Virus record (IMG/VR): IMGVR_UViG_3300024358_000009
Location: 124,001 to 188,000 of that record
Reading direction: 5' to 3' (one strand)
DNA length: 64,000 bases
The notes beneath the pieces were generated by a model. The model had not been told where the DNA came from. It ran no database searches and worked only from the letters and a program-made list of their open reading frames with translations. The translations under genes and the position numbers were made by a program. Positions 21,869 through 28,124 of the stretch are shown here, piece after piece. How positions within the stretch are numbered: the first letter of the stretch is position 1; each line of letters opens with the position of its first letter.

Positions 21869-21942
21869 GGGGATGTAGACCAACAGGCAGAGTCAAAGGA
21901 CTTAAAATCCTTCCAGTATGGGTTCGACTCCCATCATCCCTA
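21869..21942 (+). tRNA. tRNA-Leu (anticodon UAA), short variable loop, no encoded CCA
   Basis: Acceptor GGGGAUG/CAUCCCU; anticodon arm AAGGA-CUUAAAA-UCCUU; T arm AUGGG-UUCGACU-CCCAU; discriminator A. Confidence 0.92.
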
Positions 21943-25300: not shown

Positions 25301-26619
25301 ATATAAACATCGGCGATCAAGTATACAACCCATTATCAGATGTTCTAATTCATATAGATGAAGATGATGACATTGAATATGTAAATAATAATTATTTTAA
25401 AATCTGTTAATATTTTTTAGTAAACTGCGAATAAATATATAGGAAAGGGGATTAGCAATGAATGAAAAGCTAGAAGATTTGAAATGGTTAGATGGACGAA
25501 AGGTTTTAAACTTTGTTGGTATTTTACCAGACGATGAGCATCAAGAATGTATTGACTGCAAGTTCACAGGACAAGTTCATGCTGAGTTTGAAGTAGAAGG
25601 ATTGGAAGAAGCTGAAGTAGTTTGCCCAAAGTGTGCAAGCCTACATTACTACATTGTTTAGTACCTATACATGAAGGAAATCAATCATGAAAATCAAAGT
25701 ATCGGACAGGGCGATATATGGATATATACCAACAGAAAATCCAAATGTATTTAATAGAAAAAGCGTAGTATTTATAAAAGACCGAGGTTATTTATTCCAA
25801 GAAAATTCAGTAAAGATCATTAAACAAATATTGGATGGCATCGTATATGAAATAGAAGAATCAACACCATATGATGCTAAAACGATTATGTTGGAAAATC
25901 CAAGAAGGTATAGCAAGAAAAGGTTGGGCGAACTTTTTGACATTCATGTAAAAGGAAATACCAATGAAGGAAATTAAGTATATCTATGTAGATGTAACAG
26001 CTAGGGTTTGTATATCTACATACGAAGACGATAAAGAGAACTCCATCCGTGGACTTAAACCAGATTTTGTTTCTACAGTTGGTGATTATGTAGAGTGGGT
26101 AAAAGTTGAAAAAGTTAATGAATTGAAAGTTTAAGGAGCAAACATGGAAAGTAATTTGAATGAAATCGCCCAAGGTGCAATTCATGGTGATTTTTTGGCT
26201 GATGTAAGTAAAGTTGGTGAAAACTTTGTTGTCAGCATTAAACACTATAAGCATGATGAAGACCATTGCCGTGGACAAAATCAAGTAGTTGGCGAACTAC
26301 ATAAGGCTATTGGGGCATTAAACCTCAATAAGCTTGAGAACATCACGCATGGTGGCGGTTTTGCTTGTGTAAAATGTAAGTAATAAAAGTTTAAAAGGAT
26401 AGTATCATGGCTAAAGTTTCTATCAATGCTGAAAACGCTTCTAACGCTTTTTTTAATGTGGCTGATGTAATTGAGTCATTAAAAAGGTTTGACAATGTTT
26501 TGGAATCCCCTATTTCAGATGACGATGATAATGGTTATTCCATCGGCGATTGTCTAGATGACATAAAAGCATTTCTTCAACAGCTAGATGAAGAATGTAT
26601 ATCATCTGACAAAAACTAA
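22335..26619 (+). CDS. Run of small hypothetical genes, including tandem paralogues at 24364-25168
   Basis: Dense ORFs of roughly 55-115 aa with AAGGAG-type RBSs and CGAATA promoters. Confidence 0.65.
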
Positions 26620-26667
26620 TAATAAAATTAGGGTCTGTAGCTCAATAGGTTAGAGCAAGCGACTCAT

Positions 26668-27418
26668 CTGAGGTTGTCTTCTTGGTTCAAATGGTGTAAT
26701 ATAATTACAGTATTACACTATAAGGAGACAACATGAAAAGCGATGTAAGAATCTTAAATGGTTATAGACTTATATTTTTGCCAGAACACTCAAGAGCTAT
26801 GAAAAATAGCAATTGGGAAGGATATGTTTATGAACATATCGTAGTTGCTGAAGAATGTGTTGGTCGTAACTTAAAAGATGAAGAAGTTGTGCATCATTTA
26901 AATGGCAAAAGAGATGATAATAGACATCAAAATCTATTAGTTCTCGAAAGAAGCCAACACGCTAAACTTCACGCTTGGATAGACTCAGGTGCTTCTGGTT
27001 TGGAAACTGCCAGAAAGAATCGGATGAATTCAATGAAAATGTCACATAATGAACCTAAATTTTGCAAAATTTGTTTTCGGACACTACAAGATAAACAATC
27101 AAAATTTTGTGGTATTGATTGTCAATCTTTAGGAACTCGTATTGTTAATAGACCTGAAAAAAATCAATTAAAAGAAGATATTGAAAAAATGTCTTTTGTA
27201 AAAATTGGTAAAAAGTATGGTGTTTCAGACAATACGATAAGAAAATGGGCTAAGCAATATGGAATTATGCCATCAACATTGAGCCAAGCCATTGGTACAC
27301 CAATGGAAGGTGCAGAGACTAGCGGAGAGGTAAAGCCCTCTTAATAACCGCACTAGCGTCCGATATCCTTATGGGATAATGATATAGTCCATGGAGGGTA
27401 GAAATACCCACAAACATG
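26668..27418 (+). mobile_element. Group I self-splicing intron (751 nt) inserted 3' of the CAU anticodon
   Basis: P1 CAU|CUGAG pairs with CUCAG-GUG (26984-26991), U-G at the splice site; P3 AUCGGAUG/CGUCCGAU; P4 UUCAAUG/CAUUGAG; P7 from CAGAGACUA and GAUAUAGUCC; P9 GGGUA-GAAA-UACCC; terminal G27418. Confidence 0.93.
26733..27344 (+). CDS. Intron-encoded HNH homing endonuclease with Zn-finger and HTH
   Basis: YVYEHIVV...VHHLNGKRDDNRHQNL; CKIC...FCGIDC; HTH FVKIGKKYGVSDNTIRKW; AAGGAG RBS. Confidence 0.9.
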   Translation: MKSDVRILNGYRLIFLPEHSRAMKNSNWEGYVYEHIVVAEECVGRNLKDEEVVHHLNGKRDDNRHQNLLVLERSQHAKLHAWIDSGASGLETARKNRMNSMKMSHNEPKFCKICFRTLQDKQSKFCGIDCQSLGTRIVNRPEKNQLKEDIEKMSFVKIGKKYGVSDNTIRKWAKQYGIMPSTLSQAIGTPMEGAETSGEVKPS

Positions 27419-28051
27419 AATCGCTAGGTTTTCGGTTCAAATCCGAACAGACCCATTAAATAAACATTCTTTATCAACGGAGATAAATAATAATGCCCAG
27501 AACATTCCAAGCTAAGATTGTAATATTTGTCGAAGTTGATGTTCCTGACAATATGCCAGAATTAAATGTTGAAAGCTGGGTTAATTATGAGGCTAAACTT
27601 TTGGCAAATAAAATGTTGTGGGATGAAAAAACTAAATTTGAAATAGTTCATGTGGAATAAAAATATGACAAGAAAAGATTTCTTAGAACTGGTAGATAGA
27701 TCAAGGATGACAAACAGCGAAAGAATAAATGCTGGACTTCCTCTTGCAGAAGAAGATATTAGGCGAGTTCTAGATGAGTGTTATCCATATTTAAAGAAGT
27801 CAAAGGAATGGGAAAATGATAGAGATGGGTAATGGCTGGACTGTTAGCTTAAAAGACAATTCGTGTTTGAATAAACTATCATATCAAGAAAAGAAAAAAT
27901 GGTGGAATGATATAAAAAAAGTAACACCAATTCAATTTTCAGTAAAGGAAAAGGCAGATACAGCGAAGATATTATTAGAGAGAAGAACGAAATTTGAGTG
28001 GATTGTTACTAACACTCTTTTTCTTGGTCACTATCACGAAAAGAGACAAAG

Positions 28052-28124
28052 GGGCGTGTAGACCAATGGCAGAGTCAAAGGACTTAAAATCCTTCAAGTA
28101 TGGGTTCGACTCCCATCACGCCTA
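28052..28124 (+). tRNA. Second tRNA-Leu (UAA), short variable loop, no encoded CCA
   Basis: Near copy of 21869-21942 with a compensatory acceptor stem GGGCGUG/CACGCCU. Confidence 0.92.

What the first reader, a model, noticed from the sequence alone, without database searches (positions are those of the whole stretch)
26631..27455. Phage tRNA-Ile2 group I intron whose homing endonuclease ORF threads through the catalytic core
Seen: the insertion site (after CAU) and the GUG internal guide match the Azoarcus tRNA-Ile intron arrangement. Here the HNH domain sits in the P1 loop, and the same frame continues through the guide, P2, P3 and P4 (DSGASGLETARKNRMNSM). It then encodes a Zn-finger/HTH in the P5 region and reads through P4', P6 and P7 to stop at 27344. 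Known: intron ORFs normally occupy one peripheral loop with limited core overlap. Inference: extreme dual RNA/protein coding, probably fusing two loop insertions; translation and splicing should be mutually exclusive, so AUA decoding may be gated by splicing.
Basis: partly seen in the sequence, partly recalled or inferred. Interest (0 to 1): 0.8.

Follow-up and report, generated by a model that had tools for sequence, protein, structure and literature searches.

The report
Endonuclease gene threaded through ribozyme core
A phage tRNA gene is interrupted by a self-splicing intron whose catalytic RNA core also encodes the flexible linker between the two domains of the intron's own DNA-cutting enzyme. 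The same layout recurs in at least 25 related phage introns, so one sequence is kept under both RNA and protein constraints.

Summary
Window 26631-27455 is a tRNA(CAU) gene split after CAU by a 751-nt group I intron (26668-27418), with U-1 paired to G and a 3'-terminal G. Rfam Intron_gpI scores 53.9 bits over 26967-27411.

The 203-aa ORF (26733-27344) has its own SD and AUG in the P1 loop.
- The loop encodes the HNH domain.
- The ORF reads through the guide GGUG, P2, P3, P4, P5 and P5a.
- It encodes a Zn-ribbon and HTH in an L5 insert.
- It continues through P5'-P4'-P6-J6/7-P7 and stops in a conserved P7.1-like hairpin.

I found 24 further introns with this layout in phage and metagenome tRNA(CAU) genes. 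Helices inside the ORF covary, their synonymous sites are frozen, and codon periodicity is weak or absent there. AlphaFold predicts the core-encoded segments to be disordered.

Natural controls exist: ORF-less 222-240-nt versions, and an escaped free-standing copy whose internal core has decayed.

The intron belongs to the known Azoarcus-type Ile2.5Ug (IC3) class. The threaded two-loop ORF is a new variant. Splicing, translation control and cleavage remain untested: metatranscriptome contigs show only the unspliced form.

The parts
26631..26667 (+). tRNA(CAU) 5' exon, ending in the anticodon CAU (U26667 = U-1 of the 5' splice site)
   Evidence: ARAGORN with introns allowed. The spliced sequence aligns with E. 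coli tRNA-Ile(CAT), with an identical anticodon arm.
26668..27418 (+). Group I intron, 751 nt, Ile2.5Ug / IC3 type; G27418 is the terminal omega-G
   Evidence: Rfam RF00028 at 53.9 bits. U-1 and omega-G are present in all 25 ORF-carrying members and in the ORF-less L244 intron.
26665..26672 (+). P1 5' strand (CAU|CUGAG)
   Evidence: Pairs with 26984-26991. The pairs CAUC/GGUG, including the U.G wobble, are standard in 24-25 of 25 sequences. The outer 4 bp are specific to this member.
26673..26732 (+). Structured ORF leader: an 11-bp stem (26673-26683 with 26722-26732) buries the SD AAGGAG (26722-26727); inner hairpin 26691-26721
   Evidence: strand folding gives -27.7 kcal/mol, z = -4.1. The stem is kept by compensatory changes in the close relative L242 (read by eye from the sequences).
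26733..27344 (+). Homing-endonuclease ORF, 203 aa
   Evidence: the ORF listing, Pfam and PHROG matches, 395 homologs. The frame is kept through the core in 25 of 25 introns.
26748..26987 (+). HNH nuclease domain (residues about 6-85), encoded in the L1 (P1 loop) insert
   Evidence: HNH_3 E 7.6e-10. pLDDT is 84 or higher over residues 11-80. Codon periodicity is coding-like, entropy 0.93/0.59/1.48.
26984..26991 (+). P1 3' strand with the internal guide GGUG (26988-26991); encodes S85-G86-A87
   Evidence: The Gly codon is GGT in 22 of 22 sequences. It has changed to GGA in the escaped free-standing copy in L244.
26992..27017 (+). P2 hairpin with GAAA tetraloop (27003-27006); encodes residues 87-95
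   Evidence: A hairpin forms in all 26 sequences with different stem sequences; the loop is a GNRA-type tetraloop (GAAA, AAAA, GAGA, GGAA) in most.
27020..27026 (+). P3 5' strand (inside the ORF, codons N-R-M)
   Evidence: Pairs with 27357-27363. Five of the 7 pairs are standard in 25 of 25 sequences and the other two in 23 of 25, with 1-4 pair types each.
27030..27035 (+). P4 5' strand (codons S-M)
   Evidence: Pairs with 27277-27282. Compensatory variants are UCAAUG/CAUUGA, UCAGUG/CACUGA and UCAGGG/UCCUGA.
27039..27050 (+). P5 (27039-27041) and P5a (27045-27050) 5' strands
   Evidence: P5 pairs with 27271-27273: two pairs are standard in 26 of 26, one with 5 pair types. P5a pairs with 27264-69; a complementary run is present in every member, mean 6.2 nt against 4.5 in shuffles.
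27051..27263 (+). L5 insert encoding the Zn ribbon (C111-C130) and HTH (residues about 138-178)
   Evidence: Pfam PLATZ and HTH matches. Ten-residue pLDDT block means are 77-94 over residues 111-180. Codon periodicity is coding-like. This insert is absent from the ORF-less relatives.
27264..27282 (+). P5a', P5', J5/4 and P4' (inside the ORF in this member)
   Evidence: In 9 of 25 relatives the ORF stops here instead.
27289..27306 (+). P6 hairpin (loop UACA)
   Evidence: All 7 pairs are standard in 25 of 25 sequences, with 2-5 pair types each.
27307..27321 (+). J6/7 and P7 5' strand (GGUGCAGAGACUA)
   Evidence: Nearly invariant. P7 pairs with 27385-27389 and shows one compensatory UA to CG change. 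Codons GGT, GCA, GAG and ACT are fixed in 19-21 of 22 sequences.
27323..27350 (+). P7.1-like two-part hairpin between P7 and P3'; its internal loop holds the stop codon UAA 27342-27344
   Evidence: Predicted by RNAalifold with compensatory changes. It is also present in the ORF-less introns.
27357..27363 (+). P3 3' strand
   Evidence: Covaries with the coding P3 5' strand.
27365..27389 (+). P8 (short, 4 bp), J8/7 and P7 3' strand (GAUAUAGUC)
27396..27418 (+). P9 hairpin with GAAA loop and the 3' tail ACAAACAUG ending in omega-G
27419..27455 (+). tRNA 3' exon (no encoded CCA)

Best explanation
This is a mobile group I intron of the Azoarcus-type tRNA-Ile2(CAU) class (IC3, Ile2.5Ug) in a roughly 220-kb freshwater phage. 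It carries an I-HmuI-like HNH homing endonuclease whose gene is interleaved with the ribozyme.

Layout (shown):
- The nuclease domain is encoded in an insert of about 310 nt in the P1 loop.
- The DNA-binding Zn-ribbon and HTH domain is encoded in an insert of about 210 nt in L5, closed by P5a.
- The roughly 20-residue linker between the domains is the translation of the guide sequence, P2, P3, P4 and P5.
- In this member the frame runs on through P5'-P4'-P6-J6/7-P7 as a disordered tail and ends at a UAA in the loop of a conserved P7.1-like hairpin.
- In the core segments the sequence is set by the RNA. The protein only needs an open frame of tolerable length.

How it most likely works (inferred):
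- The pre-tRNA self-splices with guanosine to give tRNA-Ile2 for the abundant AUA codons.
- The endonuclease is made at low level from precursor or excised intron RNA, because its SD is buried in an 11-bp stem and a translating ribosome would unfold the core.
- The enzyme cuts or nicks intron-less tRNA(CAU) genes of co-infecting phages and drives homing.
For: - Rfam hits. The window scores 53.9 bits. Twelve threaded relatives score 55.8-82.7 bits, each hit lying inside the ORF.
- Splice sites. All 25 ORF-carrying introns and the ORF-less L244 intron lie after CAU of a tRNA(CAU) gene and end in G.
- Covariation. It supports P2, P3, P4, P5, P6, P7.1, P8 and P9, including helices whose strands are codons.
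- Codon-position entropy. It is coding-like in the L1 and L5 inserts, only weakly periodic in the 5' core (0.99/0.79/1.02) and flat in the 3' core (0.68/0.63/0.59).
- Synonymous sites. G86 is GGT in 22 of 22 sequences and S100 is TCA in 21 of 22.
- Predicted structure. There are two confident domains. pLDDT is below 50 at residues 88-105, 183-187 and 192-194, and block means are 47-56 over 181-203; these are the core-encoded parts.
- Frame. It is kept through the guide to P5 in 25 of 25 introns, while the stop position varies: L5/P5'/P4' in 9, P7.1 in 15, P9 in 1.
- ORF-less relatives of 222-240 nt lack exactly the two inserts. L244 scores 93.5 bits. L347's core is about 90-93% identical to threaded L161, and L347 is syntenic with threaded L089.
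- In the escaped free-standing copy in L244 the internal core motifs have decayed.
- The SD is sequestered in a stem.
- Class and guide sequence are documented in the literature.
Against: - No splicing evidence. Four metatranscriptome assemblies contain only unspliced contigs, at the same depth as the flanks, with no joints. Contigs cannot show rare or short spliced tRNA, and DNA carry-over is possible.
- This member has the lowest Rfam score of the family, a shortened P8 and a 3-bp P5.
- No protein or cleavage data exist.
- The structural match to I-HmuI is weak (E 0.07), and there is no sequence match in the PDB.
- The Ile2 versus Met identity rests on similarity and on the insertion site only.
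Confidence: 0.85

Rival explanations
1. Origin as proposed by the reader. Two independent loop insertions, an HNH ORF in L1 and a DNA-binding ORF in L5, became fused when the frame opened across the core.
For: - L5 is used independently as an ORF site. In L333 a different HNH gene lies wholly in L5 of a related tRNA(CAU) intron, and its frame starts at the AUG inside P3.
- That P3 triplet is in frame and reads AUG or GUG in 20 of the 22 threaded members tabulated, GUU in the other two.
- ORF-less and threaded cores differ only by the two inserts.
Against: - Free-standing relatives with the same HNH-Zn ribbon-HTH order and full-length similarity (38-50% identity) sit in phage tRNA arrays without any group I core.
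- They branch outside the threaded clade, although support is weak (SH-aLRT 83-88, quick tree).
- More distant homologs have the same architecture with short, unrelated linkers.
Confidence: 0.2
2. The tRNA is an elongator tRNA-Met rather than tRNA-Ile2, so the intron affects AUG decoding and not AUA decoding.
For: The anticodon is CAU. Similar phage tRNAs are labelled tRNA-Met by their submitters.
Against: - Those labels come from tools that call every CAU anticodon Met.
- In PGAP-annotated E. coli the best match in all 5426 genomes is tRNA-Ile. The one hit inspected has anticodon CAT and an identical anticodon arm.
- The splice site after position 36 is that of the classical Ile2 intron class. 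fMet introns lie after U33.
- AUA makes up 44% of Ile codons in the window.
Confidence: 0.15
3. This copy is a decaying relic. The intron no longer splices, the tRNA is a pseudogene, and the ORF survives as a selfish gene.
For: It has the lowest Rfam score in the family (53.9 bits), a short P8, and only unspliced contigs in RNA libraries.
Against: - All core helices, the U.G wobble, omega-G and the J6/7 and J8/7 motifs are intact in this copy.
- The locus is identical in four IMG/VR contigs.
- Heavy AUA use makes the tRNA useful to the phage.
Confidence: 0.07
4. The long ORF is not the real product. Only the HNH part is made, or the two domains are made as separate polypeptides from the internal AUG or GUG in P3.
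For: There is an in-frame AUG or GUG in P3 in nearly every member. The linker is predicted to be disordered.
Against: - A single frame links both domains in 25 of 25 introns despite high divergence in P2.
- There is no SD ahead of the internal start.
- Free-standing homologs are single two-domain proteins.
Confidence: 0.07

Closest known systems
[quoted passage not shown]
   Same: - Host gene type and insertion site, after the third anticodon base.
- Guide GUG pairing with CAU, with a U.G wobble.
- P2 follows the guide directly and carries a GAAA loop; there is no P5abc.
- Similarity of the J3/4-P4-J4/5 and J6/7-P7 motifs to Azoarcus rests on my recollection of the Azoarcus sequence and was not tested with a tool.
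   Different: The Azoarcus intron is 205 nt, ORF-less and bacterial. This one is 751 nt and in a phage. It has large inserts in L1 and L5 that together encode one protein, plus an extra P7.1-like hairpin between P7 and P3'.
HNH homing endonucleases of phage group I introns (I-HmuI of SPO1, I-BasI, I-TwoI, I-PfoP3I)
   Same: An HNH nuclease domain joined to a C-terminal HTH-type DNA-binding module, carried in a phage self-splicing intron. I-HmuI is the best, though weak, structural match.
   Different: As far as I know (own knowledge, not checked here), those ORFs lie in a single peripheral loop of introns in protein-coding genes. Here the two domains lie in different loops of a tRNA intron and are joined through the catalytic core. 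Sequence similarity to the solved structures is undetectable.
'Core creep' ORFs of organellar group I introns
   Same: The intron ORF includes ribozyme core sequence, so the same nucleotides serve both RNA and protein.
   Different: Core creep extends an ORF upstream until it fuses with a protein-coding exon and borrows that exon's translation signals. Here the exon is a tRNA, and the ORF has its own SD and AUG inside L1. Folded domains lie on both sides of the core, so the core encodes an internal linker rather than an N-terminal extension.
Free-standing homing endonucleases in phage tRNA gene clusters (e.g. T4 SegB) and I-Ssp6803I of the cyanobacterial tRNA-fMet intron
   Same: Endonucleases associated with tRNA genes. 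Free-standing relatives of this protein sit between tRNA genes in phage arrays.
   Different: SegB is a GIY-YIG enzyme. I-Ssp6803I is a PD-(D/E)XK enzyme (own knowledge), and the fMet intron class is inserted at a different anticodon-loop position.
Introns in Lak megaphage tRNA genes
   Same: Phage tRNA genes interrupted by introns.
   Different: Those introns were reported as enigmatic, and the passages read mention no endonuclease or ribozyme analysis. The relationship to this family was not tested.

Membership tests
Group I intron (Rfam RF00028) | Covariance-model score at or above the gathering threshold over the full model | tested here: met
   53.9 bits against 50, model positions 1-253, E 1e-12. 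Relatives score 55.8-93.5 bits.
Group I intron (Rfam RF00028) | U at -1 forming a U.G wobble with the internal guide in P1, and G at the intron 3' end | tested here: met
   U26667 pairs with G26989, and G27418 is the terminal base. The wobble was counted in 25 of 25 ORF-carrying introns, and all 26 introns end in G.
Group I intron (Rfam RF00028) | Conserved helices P3-P9 supported by compensatory changes | tested here: met
   Python pair counts. In RNAalifold, 23 of 34 pairs show double changes.
Group I intron (Rfam RF00028) | Guanosine-dependent self-splicing | not testable with these tools
   RNA-library contigs show only the unspliced form, which is uninformative for a 74-nt modified tRNA.
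IC3 tRNA intron, class Ile2.5Ug (Azoarcus type) | Insertion after anticodon-loop nucleotide 5 (position 36) of a tRNA(CAU) | tested here: met
   CUCAU|...G|AAUCGC. Class definition.
IC3 tRNA intron, class Ile2.5Ug (Azoarcus type) | Compact core without extra peripheral helices | tested here: not met
   A conserved P7.1-like hairpin lies between P7 and P3', and there are large L1 and L5 inserts. ORF-less relatives keep the hairpin. The intron is therefore a derived variant of the class.
HNH homing endonuclease (Pfam PF13392 HNH_3) | Profile score above the curated cut-off and conserved His/Asn motif residues | tested here: met
   38.7 bits against 24.8. H54, H55, N63, N67 and H76 are invariant in 31 sequences.
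HNH homing endonuclease (Pfam PF13392 HNH_3) | Site-specific cleavage of the intron-less allele | not testable with these tools
   Intron-less tRNA(CAU) genes with an identical anticodon arm exist in other viral contigs and are candidate targets.
tRNA-Ile2 (lysidine tRNA) | CAU anticodon with an Ile2-type rather than Met-type body | tested here: inconclusive
   The best E. coli match everywhere is tRNA-Ile, and the one hit inspected has CAT with an identical anticodon arm. No isotype-specific model or TilS determinant test was available.
Organellar 'core creep' ORF | Intron ORF fused in frame to the upstream protein-coding exon | tested here: not met
   The upstream exon is a tRNA half. The ORF starts at its own AUG 26733, with an SD at 26722-26727.

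The most novel reading that the evidence does not exclude
The threaded arrangement may be a two-way street between RNA and protein sequence. The ribozyme's guide-P2-P3-P4-P5 segment has become a permanent protein linker. When such endonuclease genes escape the intron they keep this 'fossil ribozyme' as coding sequence.

L244 shows one such escape. The free-standing tRNA-array enzymes L099 and L172 branch just outside the threaded clade, and L099 (the one whose linker was aligned) carries GAPGIERF, the peptide that the guide plus P2 encode in L090.

If this holds, part of a widespread phage endonuclease family carries protein sequence that was born from catalytic RNA. In the intron-borne forms each transcript would then have to choose between folding to splice and being translated.
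Probability: 0.35. Interest if true: 0.8.

Novelty: new variant of a known kind. Interest (0 to 1): 0.7.

Why it matters
Sequence under simultaneous selection as catalytic RNA and as protein is rare, and usually short. Here about 60-130 nt of a ribozyme core lie inside one reading frame in at least 25 diverged natural introns. Natural controls exist alongside them: ORF-less twins, an escaped copy with a decayed core, and variants whose stops fall in three different elements.

That makes several questions directly testable:
- how RNA and protein constraints are partitioned;
- how translation and ribozyme folding are kept apart on a non-coding (tRNA) transcript;
- how homing endonuclease genes enter and leave introns.

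It also shows that large phages carry mobile introns in their own tRNA genes. Default tRNA and Rfam scans miss these genes, so phage tRNA-Ile2 genes of this type are likely under-annotated.

Tried and rejected
- Default ARAGORN and the whole-window Rfam gathering scan both miss the feature. It appears only with introns allowed and with a local E-value scan.
- ARAGORN's labels (His/ATG here; Gln, Pro, Arg and others in relatives) come from shifting the splice site by a few bases. I rejected them because only the CAU| reading gives U-1 and omega-G.
- Megablast of the region against 50,697 phage records found nothing. Sequence search of the PDB found nothing.
- Laying metatranscriptome contigs gave no joints, only unspliced pieces at the depth of the flanks. 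This is uninformative.
- An alternative P1 formed by the local hairpin CAU|CUGAACC..GGUUCAAAUG was considered. I rejected it as the catalytic P1 for three reasons: GGUG next to P2 is invariant at a synonymous site, ORF-less relatives use it, and it decays once the gene leaves the intron.
- In one search I mistyped the P5 3' coordinates, and the poor P5 numbers there are an error. They are corrected.
- MAFFT misplaced the 5' 30 nt of the ORF-less L244 intron. L244 was left out of the pair counts, and its P2 was folded from a manually delimited segment.
- One literature search failed on a term that was too short.
- Distant HNH homologs in other ARAGORN-split tRNAs (L111, L115) have no Rfam group I hit and were not pursued.
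Full report
**Observation.** The sequence at 26631-27455 is a tRNA gene split in its anticodon loop. The two halves (26631-26667 and 27419-27455) join into a standard cloverleaf with acceptor stem GGGTCTG/CAGACCC and anticodon loop CUCAUAA. ARAGORN misses it by default but finds it with a 751-nt intron when introns are allowed. ARAGORN places the splice site three bases early and calls the anticodon ATG. Only the CAU| reading gives a U before the 5' splice site and a G at the intron's 3' end, so that reading is the right one.

The whole-window Rfam scan found only two tRNA-Leu genes. A local scan gave Intron_gpI at 26967-27411, covering the full model, at 53.9 bits (gathering 50, E 1e-12). The ORF 26733-27344 encodes 203 aa. 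It has an HNH_3 domain at residues 33-77, a PLATZ-like zinc ribbon at 98-131 and a helix-turn-helix at about 138-178. The best PHROG match is phrog_15471, an HNH endonuclease family.

- P1: CAU|CUGAG (26665-26672) pairs with CUCAG-GUG (26984-26991). The P1 loop of about 310 nt therefore holds the ORF leader and the HNH domain.
- From the guide onward the same frame passes through:
  - P2 (26992-27017, GAAA loop)
  - P3 (27020-27026)
  - P4 (27030-27035)
  - P5 (27039-27041) and P5a (27045-27050)
  - an L5 insert (27051-27263) that encodes the Zn ribbon and HTH
  - P5a'-P5'-P4' (27264-27282)
  - P6 (27289-27306)
  - J6/7-P7 (27307-27321)
- The frame ends at UAA 27342-27344, in the internal loop of a two-part hairpin (27323-27350) that lies between P7 and P3'.
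- P3', P8, J8/7-P7', P9 and the terminal G follow outside the ORF.

**A family, not a one-off.** The protein has 395 homologs in the 5.8-billion-protein collection. At least 79 of the best 120 clusters carry the peptide encoded by the 5' core, by a rough regular-expression count.

I recovered 24 further distinct introns with the same layout. They come from IMG/VR contigs (mostly 50-395 kb), metagenomes, Logan assemblies and two MAG contigs. Each lies after CAU of a tRNA(CAU) gene, and each ends in G. Every one tested has a full-length Intron_gpI hit that starts about 230 nt inside the ORF, at 55.8-82.7 bits. The window itself matches four IMG/VR contigs of up to 221 kb from riverine samples at 100% protein identity.

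**Evidence that the overlap is functional on both levels.**

RNA level:
- P3 has five pairs that are standard in 25 of 25 sequences and two in 23 of 25, with up to four pair types. Its 5' strand is codons and its 3' strand is non-coding.
- P4, P5 and P6 are 88-100% paired per position (P6 100% at all seven), with many double changes.
- P2 is a hairpin in all 26 sequences, with quite different stems and in most a GNRA-type loop.
- RNAalifold, run independently, recovers P6, P7, the P7.1-like hairpin, P8 and P9. In 23 of its 34 pairs at least one sequence shows a compensatory change.
- Synonymous sites are frozen in the core: Gly86 is GGT in 22 of 22, Ser100 is TCA in 21 of 22, and Ser184, Gln185, Gly193, Ala194, Glu195 and Thr196 use essentially one codon each.

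Protein level:
- All 25 introns keep one open frame from the HNH domain through the guide to P5 and into the Zn-ribbon/HTH domain.
- Per-codon-position entropy (positions 1/2/3) by region:

| Region | Entropy 1/2/3 |
|---|---|
| L1 insert (HNH) | 0.93 / 0.59 / 1.48 |
| L5 insert (Zn ribbon, HTH) | 1.15 / 0.98 / 1.59 |
| 5' core (guide to P5) | 0.99 / 0.79 / 1.02 |
| 3' core (P5' to P7.1) | 0.68 / 0.63 / 0.59 |

- The two inserts show the periodicity typical of coding sequence. The 5' core shows little and the 3' core none.
- AlphaFold gives two confident domains. pLDDT is below 50 at residues 88-105, 183-187 and 192-194, and block means are 47-56 over 181-203. These are the core-encoded linker and tail.
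- The stop position is not fixed: end of L5/P5'/P4' in 9 introns, the P7.1 loop in 15 and P9 in 1 (L243, where the ORF also reads through P3'-P8-P7').

I conclude that the 5' threading is obligatory for making a two-domain enzyme. The 3' read-through in this window is most likely an unselected by-product.

**Natural controls.**
- ORF-less introns of 222-240 nt in phage tRNA(CAU) genes lack exactly the two inserts and keep the P7.1-like hairpin. The L244 intron scores 93.5 bits.
- L347 (ORF-less) and L161 (threaded) are about 90-93% identical over the core.
- L347 is syntenic with threaded L089: 1.1 kb of upstream flank is 78% identical.
- In L244 the endonuclease gene (67% identical to the window's protein) sits free, just upstream of a tRNA(CAU) gene that carries the ORF-less intron.
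  - Its leader still begins ..ATCAT|CTGAAC.
  - Its linker keeps the length and the GA.GLE peptide.
  - Its RNA motifs have decayed: GGT has become GGA, which destroys the guide, and the P3 and P4 motifs are lost.
  - This shows that the conservation seen in threaded copies is RNA-driven, and that escape from the intron occurs.

**tRNA identity.**
- The splice site after position 36 defines the classical Ile2.5Ug class. fMet introns lie after U33.
- Azoarcus uses the same GUG/CAU pairing.
- The spliced tRNA's best match in all 5426 E. coli genomes is annotated tRNA-Ile. The one hit inspected carries anticodon CAT, and its anticodon arm is identical to the window's.
- Phage records label similar tRNAs Met, but that label does not discriminate.
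- The window is 32.7% G+C, and AUA makes up 44% of Ile codons. The other tRNAs in the window are two tRNA-Leu(UAA), which match the top Leu codon UUA.

Ile2 is likely but not proven.

**Expression.**
- The SD AAGGAG (26722-26727) is fully paired in an 11-bp stem with 26673-26683, directly after the P1 5' strand. The leader folds at -27.7 kcal/mol (z = -4.1).
- From the sequences listed, the close relative L242 keeps this pairing through compensatory changes.
- This fits the general rule that ORFs overlapping core sequence are tightly controlled (review).
- Mutual exclusion of translation and splicing is a reasonable inference, but I could not test it.
- Contigs from four riverine metatranscriptomes cover both splice sites in unspliced form, at the depth of the flanks, with no joints. 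This neither supports nor refutes splicing.

**Origin.**
- More distant homologs (38-50% identity) are free-standing ORFs between intact tRNA genes in phage arrays. They have the same domain order and no group I core.
- In a quick tree they branch outside a weakly supported clade (SH-aLRT 83) that holds all threaded forms, L244 and two others (L100, L165).
- This argues against two unrelated insertions being fused. It favours a pre-existing two-domain enzyme whose linker was replaced by, or recombined with, the 5' core. The mechanism is unknown.
- L333 keeps the fusion idea alive at low probability. There a different HNH gene lies wholly in L5 and starts at the in-frame AUG inside P3.

**Comparison with what is known.**
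- The intron belongs to a known class, Azoarcus-type IC3 tRNA-Ile2.
- The enzyme belongs to a known superfamily. I-HmuI is the best, though weak, structural match.
- Overlap of ORF and core is known in outline for bacterial introns and as 'core creep' in organelles.
- Introns in phage tRNAs were first noted in 2019 without characterisation. [quoted passage not shown]
- In the literature I could search, I found no description of an endonuclease whose two domains are encoded in two different loops and joined through P1'-P5.

I therefore rate this a new variant of a known kind.

**Limits.**
- Everything about activity (splicing, translation control, cleavage, homing) is inferred.
- The tree is a quick search with weak support.
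- The covariation counts were computed by my own script on a MAFFT alignment.
- The codon-usage ORF set is crude.

Noticed in passing
window 26665-26700 (and the same place in L086, L089, L092, L094, L097, L161-L163, L242, and the L244 leader): A conserved local hairpin encloses the 5' splice site: CAU|CUGAACC..GGUUCA(A/G)(A/G)UG. It mimics P1, with AUG or GUG opposite CAU, and contains a T-loop-like GGTTCRAAT. Its role is unknown; it could be a decoy P1, a folding switch or a remnant of a tRNA duplication.
   Followed up: partly
L333 (IMG/VR contig; the intron lies upstream of the motif at L333:3095): A related tRNA(CAU) intron of 555 nt carries a different HNH endonuclease wholly inside L5. 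Its open frame begins at the AUG inside P3 (GGAUGAA) and reads through P4 and P5.
   Followed up: partly
window 27024-27026: The P3 triplet is in frame with the ORF and reads AUG or GUG in 20 of the 22 threaded members tabulated (GUU in two). It is a possible internal start for a separate Zn-ribbon/HTH polypeptide, though no SD precedes it.
   Followed up: no
window 21869-21942 and 28052-28124: Two tRNA-Leu(UAA) genes flank the region. UUA is the most used Leu codon and AUA makes up 44% of Ile codons in this 32.7% G+C window, so the phage tRNA set matches its A/U-ending codons.
   Followed up: partly
window 26638-26681: In two different metatranscriptome assemblies (X15, X19) a contig starts exactly at 26681. 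In X15 the upstream contig ends at 26637, and in X19 at 26577. This leaves the tRNA 5' half and the first 13 intron bases uncovered. The cause could be a graph branch, a filter or a real RNA end.
   Followed up: no
window 27054-27059 and 27258-27262: CCUAAA and UAUGG, just beyond P5a, resemble the 11-nt GAAA-tetraloop receptor (CCUAAG/UAUGG). That receptor sits directly in P5 in other members, for example L269. In the closest relatives the 5' half is not conserved, so this may be chance.
   Followed up: no
L085:547-1225: The same phage contig carries a second ARAGORN-split tRNA with a 606-nt intron, inserted after the first anticodon base (..CCUU|...|CUAAG..).
   Followed up: no
L111:1419-2080, L115:465-1142, L146:1418-2095: More distant HNH homologs (39% identity) lie inside ARAGORN-split tRNA genes, but Rfam finds no group I core in the two scanned (L111, L115). 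L111:269-339 is a near-threshold twister-P3 match (35.2 against 39.9 bits).
   Followed up: no
L086:592-951 and L104:2273-2668: Phage contigs carrying these endonucleases also encode tmRNA genes (99.5 and 130.6 bits) next to the tRNA cluster.
   Followed up: no
Only 25 of them lie in ARAGORN-detectable split tRNAs. These include ORF-less introns that ARAGORN places in tRNAs other than CAU (Leu, Asn and Lys by its unchecked labels). The other 86 may lie in other genes.
   Followed up: no
L357 and L358 (IMG/VR): Uninterrupted tRNA(CAU) genes with an anticodon arm identical to the window's tRNA exist in unrelated viral contigs. They are candidate natural homing targets.
   Followed up: partly
L098 / P0119: A free-standing homolog (50% identity) with no group I core is recorded on a 5.5-Mb contig of Leptolyngbyaceae cyanobacterium JSC-12. 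A near-identical copy lies in a 195-kb IMG/VR region (L098).
   Followed up: no
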